A DNA stretch of 64,000 nucleotides from Bigelowiella natans CCMP2755 (GCA_000320545.1 ADNK01002970.1:1-64000); one strand, 5' to 3'. Shown: positions 6,276-12,200, counted from the first letter of the stretch. Numbers and translations are program-made. Notes: generated by a model from the sequence alone, not told the origin.

Positions 6276-9200
6276 CTAGCCGAACATCTCAACTCTCGTA
6301 CATTTGATCTTGTGATGATGTGTGCAATCGTCCTTACATTGGTACATAAAGCAAGGAAAGAAACTCATCCGGGTAACCACAATCTCGAGCAATATCATAT
6401 GGAGTCTGAGGTGGTGTTGGATAGATGGAATTGGATAACCTTTACATTTAAATATTCGGTAACGGAAGCGTGAAAGTGTAAAAATCACCTGCGCGTTTTC
6501 TTTCCCGTTAACGTCGTGTATAGTCTGAGACTCCAGACCCTCCATTCCACCCTGAAGTGAAGCTCAATAGTAAGCGCATATTTAAGATGGAATGGATTGT
6601 ACGGAATAGTATTTATCAGCTTTGTCAACAATTATCTCTAAATTGCAAGCAGCTTCCATCAGCGCAACACAAGTATCTTGATAGAGCCTACCTTATACCG
6701 TCGAAGGGTTTCTATGACCGATACTTGCCCTGAGAGAGCTGCATGATGCATCAATCCCCACCCATCTTTTTGATCCCTGACCCAATAATTGATCAACAAT
6801 TGCCATGAAAACAACAACTCCTGGATTCATGTCATTTTGCCGGTCTAACATACACACACTCACACACACACACACACACATCAAACAATCATTATAGCTT
6901 TCCTACCTATTGAGAAATTCTCGATTCATTTGATGATAGCCTAAATCCAGATAAGTAAGAGCATAGACCACAACACACCAATTACAATACGCTGTTTTCC
7001 GCGTTAATTTGGATCGCATCTGTAAAATATATTCCATTTCCTCAATTCAACATTGTCTGATTACTTCGGATTCGTTGCAACTCCAAGAATACCTGATCGA
7101 ATATATTTGTTCCAACAAAAAGAAATATTTGCATTGAACTCCAATACTGTCAATACTAATTCAGTTGTGCGCAGCTCGATATAAGCCAGATGGCTCTTGT
7201 GTTTGGCTCTATTCTACAACAGACGAGTTCGGATCAGTCGCTAGCATGACGTAAGTCCTGGTCGCCTCCATTACCATCTCCTTCAAGTTATCAACTACCT
7301 GAGTCCATTCCTGTGTCTGTGCAAGCACGAATATCGTACTGTTCTTTTTGGCAAATCGTCCTCTCTGAGATACCGCAAAGCATTGAGGAAACTACCACTT
7401 ACGATTAACGGAGGGGTTGCTGTTTTTCTACTATAAATAAAATAGCGAAGCGTGGCACGTGCATGCATGCACGTTGTATATGCATAATTTAACAAATACC
7501 CGAAGTCCCATCAGTTGTGCATACATTGATCTGTTATTACCCCAACGCCATCATTTAACGTTAAAGGCCATTGTGTTGTTGAGGAACCCCTTCCACTAAT
7601 CACGTGCCTTATGATCTCGATGGTACATCGTGCAAGGTTACGTGCATCAGTGATTCCACTGTGCTTAGCGCTGAATCGATAAGTTATTAAAACGAAAACC
7701 ACTTTGTGATGACGATGTGAATGATGGATGCAGATCTAGAATATCGTAGGAAAAAGGCAATGATAAGTGGAGATTAGTGGCTTCCTAAAAATACGCCAAG
7801 AAATCCAAGTCACTTGTTTCTAAAAGTAAATGGCACTACCCACCCTTCAAACTGTAGATTGAAGTGCTTTAGCATACCGTCCATGTTAGCAAATTCCACA
7901 TCTATAAGACACAATTTGAAGTTATCCCCGCAGCGTGTACAAAAACTAGTGTTGTCAATATTTACTTAGAACATGGCATGCATGTATAATATTCGTAAGA
8001 TGGGTAATAATAATGGTGATTTGTGCATCATGATTACTGAAGGTTTTGCAGAAGTGATACTCCAAATTAACCCATCGTTTATAGTAACTTGGCCTGGAGA
8101 TTTATCATTAAATTGTGAAATAGTGTTGGTTAAAATAATCACGAATATGATTCCTCCTCCTCCCCCTTCTGCTCCTCCTCCTCCTAGCCCCCCTCCCTAT
8201 TATGGCATTTATAATAATACATTAGAATGCCCTTCCTCTTGCATTCGATCGCAACAAAGCTTACCTAATCAAGGAATATATTTGAATAAAATCCATCATC
8301 ATCACCTTCAATATTATTATTATCATTACTATCATTATCATCATAACATCTCCGCGCAATTATCAAATAAAAGTGCACAGCAGCACAGTAGATACAAGGC
8401 TCTATTGGTCTTCATTTACTGACAGGATCTCTGCCTCCATCTGTGACCAAGGCGAACTTATATGGCCAAGAGCTGTTCTCCTTCAAAAAGGTGATGGTGT
8501 TGGGAGGAATAGAAGACTTGAATTACACAAAACTAGGAATGATGATTGTGATATATGATGATGATGATGATGATGGTGATGAAGGTGGAGGATAATCTAC
8601 TTCAAGGTCAGATTGTGAAACTTACAGAAAGAGTTTGTAAACCAGAGCAAGGTAAGAGAGAATGTAGCTGCAGCCATTCATCAATCTGTAAATACATTGG
8701 TACATTCGTTGACTCCTAACTGTTATTTTTGGACATGTAATACACGTTGACTCCTAACTGCTATTTTTGGATGTGTCATCAACCACATCTATTTCGTCCA
8801 ACTCGTAATCCGTGTACGAGGGACAGCAATCACCTGCGGTAAAGCATCCAGCAGAATCGGTGCTTGCTCAACATGAGCTTGGTTGATTCCTATAGAGAGA
8901 AAATGGTGAGCGTGTGATCTGTCGGAGACCAATGATAATGCCATTAAAATAACAAAAACAACAGCGTATCGGCAACCACAACAAGACCACTCTCAGACGA
9001 ACAAAAGAGAGCATACATTCACTTAAGCAAACGATTTGCAGAGTTTAGTTGTACACTAGCAATTACCTGTGAGCTTACGGCAAAACAGGGAAAGTGTTGG
9101 GTTTTCTGTAGGCCGAACATACACCTAACAAAGTAGTATTAGTGGGAAGCTCAAGGACGATTGAATGTGCGATGACTCTCTCCGAAGATAAATGTACATG

Positions 9201-12200
9201 GGGTGCAAGTTAAATCTCTGTTTACTTGAAGCGTATCGTCGATGTTCAACGTTTGTGCGTTCAGAAGGACAAACGACATTTCTATGATTTCTTGTTCCAT
9301 GCCAACAAAGTTTGACTGAGGAGACGATAGTAGTAATAATGATAATTATGATGATGTTGCTGCTGTTGTTGTTGATGGTGATGATGAGAAGAAGGAGCAG
9401 AATGATGAAGAAGTGATGATAATTGATGATGCGTATCTTAGAAAAACACGAGGGGAGTTAAAAACCAAAAGGTGATTAAGAAAGGAGCTTAACTAACATC
9501 ATCTTACTACTATATTTTACTGCTAATCCTACTCTCCTACCCCTTCCTCGCATGTTGCTTCTATATCCATGACCAAGTAATACTTCACACGACGATGATT
9601 GCGAGCACCCGTATTGTTACTATTATCGTGAGTCTTCGTAATCAGATTCTTCCTCTAATACCAAACATTCGGTTATGCCCAATGTTCCATCAAAAGACAA
9701 ACTCTATTTCTTAACAAAACAAACACGGTTTAGTTTCAGCTTTCTCAAAATTACATCTCCCCAACTTCGCTATCAGGAGGATATTCGTCTTGGTTTTGTC
9801 CTCTTCTACTTCTAATGATTTTACCTTGAGAAATTGCTTAGGACTCCCCTTGCTGCTGATACTGCTATATGATGATGTTGTAATTGCTTCCTCTATTGCA
9901 CTGCGATGACGGCAATCGCCTATTTTCGGTTGCTTGCCATTTAAAGTCCTTTTCCCTGCATATTAGACATTGTGTGCATTTATGGTGAGAAGTGAGTGTG
10001 TACGCTGGCACGTAAAGAAAGAGAGAGATAGAGAAACCGAGAAACAGCGATACACTTTAAGCATGCACTAAACTAAGACACCAAATATCACAAACAAGAT
10101 GTTGTCAAGGCTGCTTAAAGTAAAAACAATTCTCTCCCATGTGATTATCGGTCAATTTGTAGTAGTAGCGTCCACCAGTGCGGATGTAATTCATTTCTTG
10201 GGGAACTGAGTTTCTGCATGAACAGCAAATATATACTCGATAAGAGATGATGATATACAACAACGAATAGACATATACGCTGCAGCCACTGTCACCATAA
10301 TCTGTCTATTCGGTCGTTGGAAAAACCTTTTCTCCGGAGGATAATACGGTAGACCCAAAGCTGCGAATATCTCCTCCTACACGGTTGATTTATTACATGG
10401 AAAGACGGCGAAATGAGTCAAACACGCATGTAATGGAACCAAAATTAAAAATAGGCCTTATTGTATGTTGTGACCATCGTGCAACGGTGTTGTAGAAGTA
10501 GTAATAGAAATTTATATGTTTAAAGTCCCATTGTGTGCATGTGCATGTACGTGTGCGTGCGGCTGTACTACCTCCGTTTTGCATTTTATAGGTTTTCCAA
10601 TGGCTATTTTCTTGTCGTTTATACGGACTAATCCATTTTCCGATAAAGAATAACCTAGTGTGTGAAGTACATTCATGCTCAAACCACCATATCGAAGCTT
10701 GCTCTTGAAAGAAAAAAACAACATGGTAGATAAAGTATTGGCACAAATACCGTCGGGGTCTATTTCAACACATATCACCAACCCTCCATTGTTTTCATAG
10801 TGCTGTATTGTGAGCTAAGTCGCAGCCAACGTACCTAGGGAGTTCGCATGATTACGAAGACACCGATTGAACTCTCTTCCACTTTGGAAATGAATTCTAG
10901 GAAAGGACGAAGAGTTTATACCAATGCGACGGATGGGAAGCAGACAATTCAGCTTATGAAACAATAACGAGTTGTTTATTTTCGTCGGCTCTGACCTTTG
11001 AAATGGCAACGAAGCTCGATGACAAACGCGTACGTCAACTCTTCTATGTAGGCCGGTACCACCCGAAGATTTTGGTAAGAATCCCACTGCTAAAGCACAC
11101 TCGCCATAAGAGAGGCCAGGATATATTTGCGGTTTGTTGGAGAACCGAGCCTTTTTCAGGGACTTTTCTCTATCGTCTCTACAGCGGCCATTCCGCACTT
11201 CCTTCTTGCTAGAATTCTTTATGTTGTAAACACACCATAGAGGCAGCAAACAGCACCACAGTATCTCTCAATGACATGCTCACACATACTATCTTGCTAC
11301 ATTATCTAACATATACCTCCACAACAATCGATAGCAGATACAGAGAAGGGGTAATATAATGAGCGGATTTACCCGTTTACGCATCTTCTTCACTCCCCGA
11401 TTGACTCGGTCATCATCACTATCATTACCATTCTTATCGTCATCATCATCCTCATTTCCAGATACTGCACAAGGACCCGAAAGCACGTGCGTTAACATTC
11501 CTTTCTCCATCAAGGCCATTACTGCCGTACCATCAATGTCATCAATTATTAGAAGCATGAATCGAATGCAAGAGGTTGATATAATCATAAAGATATGTTG
11601 TCATTTGCAATATATCTTCGATGCTGTTCACATCATCGTCACATCGTCAGTGTCATCCTCTTCGTCGTCAACGTCATAAGTTTTGTCCAGCAGGTCACAA
11701 TACATACCAATAGGCTTGAGCCACTTGATATTTTCTCCTTTTTACAAAACACGTGACCGCTTATTAGGAATCAACGGGTTTCAATTAAAACAAAAATGAA
11801 AAGGAGACGAAACAGGAGCCTCGGAAGATGAAGGTGATAAGGCTACTACCATCCCGCAGAGAAACGTCGTAGAACATGAGGTCGATGTCTCTTGAGTCAG
11901 ATTTGCCGCGACTAATGGACCCGCAAAGCTAGCAAAACAACCAAAACTCTTAGCATCTGCAATGTGTGCATGTTCGTATGCGTGTGTGCCTGTGAGAATT
12001 AACAGCAGAAATACCTCTACTCGAAGATTTGATGAGAGATCTGCAATGCACTGCAATAAAACATGAAGATTAAAGTTATGACGTCAAATGGACAATCATT
12101 CAACGATGTCTTCCATTCAGTCGTATATTATAAATCACAGAATGATGAAGAAGGCAAAGCACCTTCTTAGCTTCTCTAAGGTAGGATAATGCCTCTGCTC

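What the first reader, a model, noticed from the sequence alone, without database searches (positions are those of the whole stretch)
7560..11250. Family X DNA polymerase apparently fused to an intact ERI1-like DEDDh 3'-5' exonuclease
Seen: the PolX thumb ends ...YYPPEKR at a GT donor (10326). A 38-nt exon (10213-10176, NSVPQEMNYIRT-G) follows, then intron 10175-9956, exon 9955-9825 (KRTLNGKQPK...PKQFLK) and the ExoI exon (9654-9541), all phase-compatible. The exonuclease has no usable in-frame ATG of its own except one inside the PolX terminal exon, so no promoter fits between them. All five DEDDh residues and all three polymerase aspartates are present. Known: eukaryotic Pol beta/lambda/mu/TdT lack a 3'-5' exonuclease, bacterial PolX uses a PHP domain instead, and ERI proteins are RNA-trimming DEDDh enzymes. 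Inference: this could be a self-editing or end-trimming repair polymerase, possibly removing 3' ribonucleotides or blocked ends. I know of no described example.
Basis: partly seen in the sequence, partly recalled or inferred. Interest (0 to 1): 0.92.

Follow-up and report, generated by a model that had tools for sequence, protein, structure and literature searches.

The report
Repair polymerase fused to trimming exonuclease
This alga (Bigelowiella natans) really makes one spliced mRNA encoding a family X DNA-repair polymerase joined in frame to an intact ERI1-type 3'-5' exonuclease, a combination I found described nowhere for eukaryotes and which the reference annotation splits apart.

Summary
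**Observation: confirmed.**
- donor at 10326
- 38-nt exon 10213-10176
- intron 10175-9956
- exon 9955-9825
- ExoI exon 9654-9541

**RNA evidence.** Spliced transcript contigs from three independent studies carry these joints in one contig. An independently assembled culture transcript (L001) encodes P0007, which is 98% identical to the window's product with no gaps. It encodes PolX, linker and exonuclease as a single 802-codon ORF.

**Conservation.** A divergent orthologue (P0001/P0005, about 49% identical, 1517-1530 aa, complete ORF) has the same architecture. A short motif just after the thumb is conserved in five transcript-derived sequences.

**Domains.**
- The polymerase half is Pol lambda-like. 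Its Asp triad is intact, but it has HFQSG in place of YFTGS, appears to lack the lyase lysine, and has a large Loop-1 insertion.
- The nuclease half is closest to ERI1, with all DEDDh residues and no SAP domain.

**Gene extent.** The gene is far larger than the finding, about 18100 to 6221 on the minus strand, with an N-terminal region and an ankyrin-like tail.

**Annotation.** JGI model Bigna1 64862 annotates only a truncated exonuclease.

**Function.** Tethered 3'-end trimming plus gap filling at DNA breaks is inferred, not tested.

**Verdict.** A new variant of a known kind, so far seen only in this narrow lineage.

The parts
16486..17993 (-).
   Evidence: Collinear tblastn matches to orthologue P0001 residues 61-367. 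By arithmetic, contig X1 record 6 reaches about 1.9 kb of spliced sequence upstream of 14295. The FHA identity was not confirmed.
14961..16054 (-). BRCT-like region exons
   Evidence: tblastn to P0001 residues 422-553. Pfam BRCT is only marginal on P0005 (E 0.067).
10327..14295 (-). Sixteen exons: the first (14295-14095) is pre-polymerase, low-complexity sequence; the other fifteen encode the Pol lambda-like core (8-kDa HHH_8, fingers, palm, thumb). Coordinates: 14295-14095, 13933-13824, 13501-13467, 13178-13145, 13064-12991, 12690-12612, 12495-12460, 12285-12163, 12050-12015, 11928-11850, 11737-11708, 11521-11373, 11216-10996, 10896-10835, 10654-10572, 10376-10327
   Evidence: Exon map of transcript L001 on the window, all GT..AG. 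Joints seen. Pfam domains on P0007 are all above their cut-offs. Fold match to Pol lambda/beta has TM about 0.8.
10214..10326 (-). 113-nt intron after the thumb exon (GT at 10326-10325, AG at 10215-10214)
   Evidence: Joint 10213>10327 in X1, X2 and X3 and in L001. The depth bins leave no room for contigs in this intron.
10176..10213 (-). 38-nt exon encoding the conserved post-thumb motif NSVPQEMNYIRT
   Evidence: The motif [VIL]Pxx[ML]xY[IL][RH]xxG is conserved in five sequences. Model pLDDT is about 76 here against about 30 in the rest of the linker.
9825..9955 (-). Linker exon: basic and Ser-rich, predicted disordered, fast-evolving but frame-preserving
   Evidence: Seven of the 16 amino-acid differences to P0007 lie here, with no indel. 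pLDDT is below 50.
7541..9654 (-). Ten exons of the ERI1-like DEDDh exonuclease: 9654-9541 (ExoI D,E), 9315-9226, 9124-9067, 8889-8834, 8685-8626, 8480-8424 (ExoII D), 8264-8221, 8093-8038, 7901-7844, 7670-7541 (ExoIII H..D)
   Evidence: Joints. L001 map. RNase_T on P0007 residues 550-735, E 1.2e-14. ERI1 structure 1W0H, E 9.6e-32, with the catalytic residues aligned.
6334..7364 (-). C-terminal exons: 7364-7299, 7092-7065 and 6940-6907 (or 7092-6907 with a 124-nt intron retained, which gives an early stop), 6776-6692, 6551-6489, 6405-6334 (stop at 6336-6334). Ankyrin-like tail
   Evidence: L001 map. Removing intron 7064-6941 extends the ORF by 77 codons to a C-terminus like that of P0001/P0006. 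The splice of 7064-6941 itself was not observed.

Best explanation
**What is shown.** One minus-strand gene (about 18100 to 6221) is transcribed and spliced into a single mRNA. Its ORF joins these parts in order:
- an N-terminal recruitment-type region
- a Pol lambda-like family X polymerase
- a roughly 80-residue, mostly disordered linker that begins with a conserved short motif
- an ERI1-family DEDDh 3'-5' exonuclease
- an ankyrin-like tail

Both catalytic centres are intact. The architecture is conserved in a divergent relative.

**What is inferred.** The protein works at DNA breaks or gaps. The polymerase fills in, and the flexibly tethered exonuclease trims the 3' end of the same DNA end: unpaired, mismatched or otherwise unusable 3' nucleotides and short 3' overhangs. 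This would supply in cis what bacterial PolX gets from its PHP domain and what mammalian Pol beta borrows from APE1 or TREX1.

Four features point to end joining rather than classical short-patch base excision repair:
- the missing lyase lysine
- the changed steric-gate motif
- the large Loop-1 insertion
- a second, canonical PolX gene in the same genome
For: **RNA evidence**
- One spliced contig (3708 and 3747 nt) covers polymerase and exonuclease exons in X2 and X3.
- A 1006-nt contig crosses the junction in X1.
- The three runs come from three studies, and all joints are GT..AG.
- The frame stays open across all junctions.

**Independent transcript**
- L001 is 2881 nt and maps as 33 exons at 93-100% identity. 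It encodes the 802-aa P0007.
- The ORF derived from the window is 786/802 identical to P0007 with no gaps.

**Orthologue**
- P0001/P0005 is a complete ORF of 1517/1530 aa with HHH_8, fingers, palm, thumb and RNase_T.
- It is collinear with the window from 17993 to 6343.

**Domains and linker**
- Domain identities and catalytic residues.
- The thumb ends exactly where human Pol lambda ends.
- The post-thumb motif is conserved in five sequences. The Met in it is not conserved as a start codon.
- The linker has no other in-frame ATG, apart from one directly before the catalytic Asp.

**Genome context**
- A second PolX with YFTGS lies at G000 C3589.

**Literature**
- ERI-1/3'hExo/Snipper-type enzymes prefer duplexes with 2-5 nt 3' overhangs, and the family includes the DNase CRN-4 (PMC3439924).
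- Pol beta lacks an exonuclease and is proofread by APE1/TREX1 (PMC8258793, PMC5957452).
- Bacterial PolX edits 3' ends with its PHP domain (PMC2566882).
Against: - No protein-level or enzymatic data exist.
- Contigs cannot show transcript starts, so an additional exonuclease-only mRNA from an internal start is not excluded. Depth in X1 rises towards the 3' end (56.6, 89.5, 165.5), which could be 3' bias or a second start.
- Characterised ERI1/ERI3 enzymes are RNA enzymes.
- The model gives no fixed packing of the two domains (pTM 0.51, linker pLDDT about 30), so classical intramolecular proofreading geometry is unsupported.
- The FHA and BRCT identities of the N-terminal region were not confirmed.
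- The fusion was seen in only two divergent taxa, plus fragments.
Confidence: 0.55

Rival explanations
1. The fusion is real, but the nuclease acts on RNA or ribonucleotides. Either it removes 3' ribonucleotides added by a polymerase with relaxed sugar selection, or it processes RNA ends and RNA:DNA hybrids at damage sites. It would not trim DNA ends.
For: - The closest solved relatives are the RNA enzymes ERI1 and ERI3.
- The steric-gate motif is HFQSG instead of YFTGS in all members.
- The same genome fuses another ERI-like nuclease to the RNA enzyme Tpt1.
Against: - No SAP RNA-binding domain is present.
- The family contains promiscuous and DNA-degrading members: Snipper and CRN-4. CRN-4 is also among the PDB hits.
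- The partner domain is a DNA repair polymerase.
Confidence: 0.25
2. One of the two catalytic domains is no longer used catalytically, and the fusion serves as a scaffold or targeting device. For example, the polymerase core may act only as a DNA-end binder for the nuclease.
For: - The polymerase deviates from canonical motifs: HFQSG, the lyase lysine position occupied by Asp or Phe, and a 50-75 residue Loop-1 insertion.
- A canonical PolX paralogue exists that could do the standard job.
- Prokaryotic noncanonical PolXs that act only as exonucleases are known (PMC9226535, title and abstract).
Against: - The Asp triad, the GS..RGK motif and all DEDDh residues are conserved in both divergent orthologues.
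- Both domains are modelled with pLDDT above 90.
Confidence: 0.1
3. These are two neighbouring genes. The joined RNA is a read-through or conjoined transcript or an assembly chimera, and the cell makes separate polymerase and exonuclease proteins.
For: - The JGI reference annotation has a separate 230-aa exonuclease model (Bigna1 64862 = P0062).
- Contigs cannot prove a single molecule (caveat).
- Depth rises 3'-ward in X1.
Against: - The joint is made by two specific GT..AG splices through a 38-nt exon, not by overlap.
- It recurs in three studies and in a fourth, separately assembled transcript.
- The frame is preserved in a roughly 49%-identical orthologue across a 125-residue linker without any start codon.
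- The residues upstream of the only candidate Met are conserved.
- The JGI model starts at the Met directly before the catalytic Asp and skips an exon, which is the signature of a truncated prediction.
Confidence: 0.06

Closest known systems
Eukaryotic DNA polymerase lambda (family X; human POLL, fungal Pol4)
   Same: - Same core order: 8-kDa HHH domain, fingers, palm, thumb.
- The best PDB sequence matches are Pol lambda (E 4.5e-34), and the fold match has TM about 0.8.
- The Asp triad is conserved.
- The thumb ends at the same residue as the human enzyme.
   Different: - Carries about 400 extra C-terminal residues: linker, DEDDh exonuclease and an ankyrin-like tail.
- Has HFQSG instead of YFTGS.
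- The lyase lysine position is not Lys.
- Has a 50-75 residue insertion at Loop 1.
- The same genome also has a canonical PolX.
ERI1 / 3'hExo family of DEDDh exonucleases (ERI1, ERI2, ERI3, Snipper, CRN-4)
   Same: - RNase_T domain above the Pfam cut-off.
- Best solved relative is ERI1 1W0H at E 9.6e-32, then ERI3, ERI2 and CRN-4.
- All five DEDDh residues align.
   Different: - No SAP domain.
- Sits C-terminal to a DNA polymerase instead of standing alone.
- Substrate unknown.
Bacterial/archaeal PolX with C-terminal PHP domain (B. subtilis, T. thermophilus, D. radiodurans)
   Same: Same logic and same order: a PolX core followed by a C-terminal 3'-5' exonuclease domain that edits unannealed 3' termini in gapped DNA (PMC2566882, PMC2665239).
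   Different: The nuclease fold is unrelated: DEDDh/RNase T-like rather than PHP. No PF02811 was found. The link is a long disordered tether, so this is a convergent architecture, not homology.
Extrinsic proofreaders of Pol beta: APE1 and TREX1/TREX2
   Same: Same proposed division of labour: a PolX without its own exonuclease is helped by a separate 3'-5' exonuclease. TREX1/2 are also DEDDh enzymes (PMC8258793, PMC5957452).
   Different: Here the nuclease is covalently joined. It belongs to the ERI1 branch, and TREX proteins are not among the PDB matches at E up to 0.001.

Membership tests
Family X DNA polymerase (Pol lambda-like) | HHH_8, lambda fingers, palm and thumb domains in order | tested here: met
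   All four Pfam models are above their curated cut-offs on P0007, which is 98% identical to the window's product. The same holds on orthologue P0001. Single window exons are too short to score.
Family X DNA polymerase (Pol lambda-like) | Three catalytic aspartates (DxD in the palm plus a third Asp) | tested here: met
   The window has RDIDLMF (exon 11928-11850) and RRVDVRV (exon 11216-10996). In one search the orthologue's equivalents (rDiDil, hrriDir) align to gDvDvl and hrrlDir of human Pol lambda.
Family X DNA polymerase (Pol lambda-like) | PolX fold | tested here: met
   The AlphaFold2 model has pLDDT above 90 over the core. Foldseek against Pol lambda/beta gives E about 1e-22 and target TM 0.75-0.83.
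Family X DNA polymerase (Pol lambda-like) | YFTGS steric-gate motif and dRP-lyase lysine of Pol beta/lambda | tested here: not met
   The window has IHFQSG; relatives have LHFQSG, LHFSSG and LHFGSG. The column of the lyase Lys in the alignment is Phe in P0001 and Asp in the window (GIGKKIACDI). Which column is the nucleophile rests on my memory of Pol beta K72 and Pol lambda K312. This makes it a variant PolX, not a non-member.
ERI1/3'hExo-like DEDDh exonuclease | RNase_T (PF00929) domain with the D, E, D, H, D catalytic residues | tested here: met
   PF00929 scores E 1.2e-14 on P0007 residues 550-735. DIE, TDGGRD and HSGITD align to the ERI1 catalytic residues in 1W0H. The window exons carry the same residues.
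ERI1/3'hExo-like DEDDh exonuclease | Closer to ERI proteins than to other DEDDh branches (TREX, ISG20, DnaQ) | tested here: met
   Only eight PDB sequences match at E up to 0.001. All are ERI1, ERI2, ERI3 or CRN-4.
ERI1/3'hExo-like DEDDh exonuclease | N-terminal SAP domain of ERI1 proper | tested here: not met
   No SAP hit on P0007, P0001 or P0005. The preceding linker is predicted to be disordered. It is therefore a family member but not an ERI1 orthologue in architecture.
ERI1/3'hExo-like DEDDh exonuclease | RNA 3'-end substrate | not testable with these tools
   Needs enzymology.
Bacterial PolX-PHP | PHP domain (PF02811) C-terminal to the PolX core | tested here: not met
   No PHP hit on P0007, P0001 or P0005. 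It works like this family in layout only.
PNKP/APTX/APLF-type FHA plus BRCT recruitment modules | FHA and BRCT domains N-terminal to the polymerase | tested here: inconclusive
   BRCT scores only E 0.067 on P0005. No FHA Pfam hit, and no PDB sequence hit for P0001 residues 25-175. The resemblance to PNKP-type FHA is by eye only.

The most novel reading that the evidence does not exclude
This is the first eukaryotic family X polymerase with its own 3'-5' exonuclease. It would be a break-repair enzyme conserved in this algal lineage, in which a tethered ERI1-type nuclease cleans or proofreads the 3' end that the polymerase then extends. It would be convergent with bacterial PolX-PHP. It would also be a natural 'Rosetta stone' for the long-proposed partnership between PolX enzymes and separate DEDDh exonucleases.
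Probability: 0.4. Interest if true: 0.75.

Novelty: new variant of a known kind. Interest (0 to 1): 0.62.

Why it matters
- **Gap in eukaryotic PolX enzymes.** Pol beta, lambda, mu and TdT are textbook examples of polymerases without proofreading. How their errors and unusable 3' ends are handled is usually explained by separate nucleases such as APE1 and TREX1.
- **What this fusion offers.** A natural, expressed and conserved covalent fusion of a PolX to a DEDDh nuclease gives a directly testable model of that coupling.
- **Substrate range of the ERI1 fold.** It suggests that the ERI1 fold can be recruited to DNA-end work.
- **Convergence.** The PolX-plus-3'-exonuclease layout appears to have arisen twice, with unrelated nuclease folds.
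- **Annotation error.** The B. natans reference gene catalogue holds a truncated exonuclease-only model for this locus.

Tried and rejected
- **Pfam on single exons.** No hits, because the exons are too short. I used stored public proteins instead.
- **No joined model of the window was sent to any search or folding tool.** Searches used single exons by reference and the stored proteins P0007, P0001 and P0005. Exons were joined only inside local scripts, to check frame, stops and identity.
- **Raw RNA reads of run X21.** Only 11 reads were laid, so they are not informative.
- **Two-chain complex prediction, polymerase core against exonuclease domain.** No verdict. This is not evidence either way.
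- **PDB sequence search with the orthologue's N-terminal 150 residues for an FHA match.** Nothing found.
- **ESM Atlas look-alike search.** Only stand-alone ERI-like clusters, all below 0.9, and no two-domain cluster.
- **Literature searches for a eukaryotic PolX-DEDDh or PolX-ERI1 fusion.** Nothing found. Two bacterial PolX surveys describe no PolX-DEDDh/DnaQ fusion: one has no hit for the fusion, DnaQ or DEDD terms, and the other uses DEDDh only for family C and A exonucleases. Searches returned nothing relevant.
- **Transcripts stopping just after the linker motif (P0003, P0004, P0008).** I considered that these show a polymerase-only isoform. I rejected them as evidence:
  - Contig L013 simply ends 48 nt after a stop.
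  - The stop lies in what looks like unspliced, TG-repeat intron sequence following a GT.
- **The lyase lysine.** I first read GIGKK as keeping it. Checking the columns of the alignment showed the nucleophile position is Asp.

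
Full report
**1. The observation**

The region is a eukaryotic, intron-rich locus on the minus strand with no N in 6001-18500.

- The thumb exon 10376-10327 ends ...YYPPEK plus the first two bases of an Arg codon.
- The donor GT is at 10326-10325.
- The 38-nt exon 10213-10176 reads NSVPQEMNYIRT.
- The intron is 10175-9956.
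- Exon 9955-9825 reads KRTLNGKQPK...PKQFLK.
- The ExoI exon 9654-9541 ends ...KYYLVMDIEATCEEG.
- The junction phases are 2, 1, 0, 0, and no stop occurs.

**2. RNA evidence**

It used one raw RNA-seq run and Logan contigs of three runs from three different studies.
- The raw run gave only 11 reads.
- The three contig sets are spliced, so they derive from RNA.
- In X2 and X3 a single contig (3708 and 3747 nt, depth 32 and 42) runs through polymerase exons (12163-12284 in X3, 11373-11521 and 10996-11216 in both) and exonuclease exons (9825-9954, 9541-9654, 7541-7670).
- In X1 a 1006-nt contig (depth 89.5) crosses the junction.
- All three runs show the joints 10213>10327, 9954>10175 and 9654>9825. 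After resolving the ambiguous bases, every joint is GT..AG on the minus strand.

The depth bins match the spliced exons alone. Nothing is laid in intron 10326-10214.

The only unspliced piece in intron 10175-9956 is in X2 (9964-10118, depth 5.8 against 32.4).

One caveat: contigs cannot show transcript starts.

**3. Independent transcripts and an orthologue**

I searched the longest polymerase exon (window:10998-11216:-) against 1.8 billion representative proteins. It returned P0001, a 1517-aa complete ORF from a marine culture transcriptome (MMETSP), matching at residues 912-979.
- P0001 carries HHH_8, lambda fingers, palm, thumb and RNase_T.
- tblastn shows it is collinear with the window, exon after exon, from 17993 to 6343.
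- A 1530-aa member of the same 90% cluster (P0005) sits as one ORF on a 4780-nt transcript contig.

A second search with the two-domain part of P0001 returned P0007 (802 aa, JGI sample 3300017138) as the only other protein with both PolX and RNase_T domains.
- Its 2881-nt contig L001 maps to the window as 33 GT..AG-bounded exons from 14295 to 6221, at 93-100% identity per exon.
- The ORF read from the window along that exon chain is 802 codons, without gaps, and 786/802 identical to P0007.
- P0007 is therefore a separately assembled transcript from the same or a sister strain. It confirms the whole splice chain.
- I used P0007 as a stored stand-in for the window's product.

**4. The organism and its annotation**

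A search with the nuclease domain found P0062, named jgi/Bigna1/64862.
- Its cleanly aligned exons match the window at 100%.
- The model is 230 aa, starts at the Met directly before the catalytic Asp (ATG 9570) and skips exon 8685-8626.
- It is a truncated, exonuclease-only prediction, so the reference catalogue does not show the fusion.

**5. What the domains are**

*Polymerase half*
- The best solved relatives are human Pol lambda (E 4.5e-34), then Pol beta and Pol mu.
- The alignment ends at the last residues of Pol lambda, so everything after ...PPEKR is an extension.
- A model built on a 25-sequence alignment has pLDDT above 90 over the core. It matches Pol lambda/beta structures at target TM 0.75-0.83.
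- The Asp triad is present.
- Deviations, conserved in the relatives: HFQSG for YFTGS; a non-lysine at the position I take to be the dRP-lyase nucleophile; and a 50-75 residue charged insertion at Loop 1, modelled as disordered.
- The genome has a second, canonical PolX (YFTGS, thumb at 48.5 bits) on contig C3589 without the post-thumb motif.

*Nuclease half*
- RNase_T scores E 1.2e-14.
- The closest solved sequences are ERI1 (E 9.6e-32), ERI3, ERI2 and CRN-4. All DEDDh residues align.
- No SAP domain is present.

*Linker*
- It is about 80 residues in the window and about 125 in P0001.
- It is predicted to be disordered, except for its first dozen residues.
- Those residues form a motif, [VIL]Pxx[ML]xY[IL][RH]xxG, conserved in five sequences.
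- The Met inside it is Leu in one relative, and residues before it are conserved. This argues that it is translated as an internal peptide, not used as a start.

**6. Extent of the gene**

*Upstream*
- P0001 matches continue through a BRCT-like region (16054-14961).
- They continue through a long low-complexity exon (17820-16486) and a short conserved N-terminal region (17993-17792).
- By arithmetic, contig X1 record 6 extends about 1.9 kb of spliced sequence upstream of 14295.
- FHA and BRCT identities were not confirmed.

*Downstream*
- L001 retains a 124-nt segment (7064-6941) that carries a stop.
- Removing it as a GT..AG intron extends the ORF 77 codons to a stop at 6336-6334.
- The resulting ankyrin-like tail resembles the C-terminus of P0001/P0006.
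- That splice was not observed directly.

**7. How it most likely works**

*Shown:* one mRNA, one ORF, two intact catalytic domains, and conservation in a relative about 49% identical.

*Inferred:* a break or gap repair enzyme in which the polymerase fills in and the tethered nuclease trims the 3' end. The supports for this are indirect:
- The layout mirrors bacterial PolX-PHP, whose PHP domain resects unannealed 3' termini (PMC2566882).
- Pol beta lacks an exonuclease and is proofread by APE1 and TREX1 (PMC8258793, PMC5957452).
- ERI-1/3'hExo/Snipper enzymes prefer duplexes with 2-5 nt 3' overhangs, and CRN-4 degrades DNA (PMC3439924).
- The lost lyase lysine, the altered gate and the big Loop 1 resemble the end-joining polymerases more than Pol beta. 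This last comparison rests on my own knowledge.

The long disordered tether and pTM 0.51 argue for a flexible, not rigid, coupling. A two-chain prediction gave no verdict.

The main rival is that the nuclease acts on RNA or ribonucleotide ends.

**8. Novelty**

- The 761-residue search admitted proteins of 419-1332 aa and would rank two-domain proteins first. It found only P0007.
- The same list shows other PolX fusions: with DNA ligase, with PNK-type phosphatase and with an Exo_endo_phos nuclease. None has a DEDDh domain.
- Full-text searches found no description.
- Distribution as seen here: B. natans and a close strain, one divergent culture transcriptome, and three fragments with the motif.
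- I rate it a new variant of a known kind: real, expressed and conserved, but lineage-restricted and functionally untested.

Noticed in passing
window 7541-9570 (minus strand): JGI model Bigna1 64862 (P0062, 230 aa) annotates only the exonuclease. It starts at the Met just before the catalytic Asp and skips exon 8685-8626. The reference annotation of this locus is truncated and split.
   Followed up: yes
G000 contig C3589, about 19008-20547 (+); loci L014, L015: A second, canonical PolX gene: CGSYRRG, HRRLD, YFTGSDHFNRSMR, and a thumb at 48.5 bits. It has no post-thumb motif and no exonuclease visible in the roughly 1.4 kb fetched downstream of the thumb (L014 ends at 21945).
   Followed up: partly
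window 10996-11521 (minus strand): An acidic/basic insertion of about 75 residues at the Loop-1 position of the palm, modelled as disordered. It is about 50 residues in the orthologue. Loop 1 governs template dependence in TdT and Pol mu.
   Followed up: partly
window 6941-7064 (minus strand): Transcript L001 retains a 124-nt GT..AG segment that introduces a stop. Without it, the ORF continues into an ankyrin-like C-terminus, as in P0001. This may be an alternative isoform or incomplete splicing.
   Followed up: partly
window 9825-9955 (minus strand): The linker exon differs from the sister-strain transcript at 9 of 132 bases, giving 7 amino-acid changes, while most other exons are 98-100% identical. 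This indicates relaxed constraint with the frame preserved.
   Followed up: yes
window 32728-35325: Earlier notes describe a second ERI-like exonuclease fusion (Tpt1-ERI3-like) in the same window. Two ERI-family fusions lie within 25 kb of each other in one genome.
   Followed up: no
one search hit list (P0029, P0033, P0037, P0031, P0040-P0049): Metagenomic and viral PolX proteins are fused to PNK-type phosphatase, to Exo_endo_phos nuclease or to ATP-dependent DNA ligase. PolX seems to recruit end-processing partners by fusion repeatedly.
   Followed up: no
L013 2760-2827: Transcript contig of P0008 ends 48 nt after a stop. The stop lies in TG-repeat sequence following a possible GT donor, so it is probably an unspliced intron and not a natural polymerase-only end.
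   Followed up: partly
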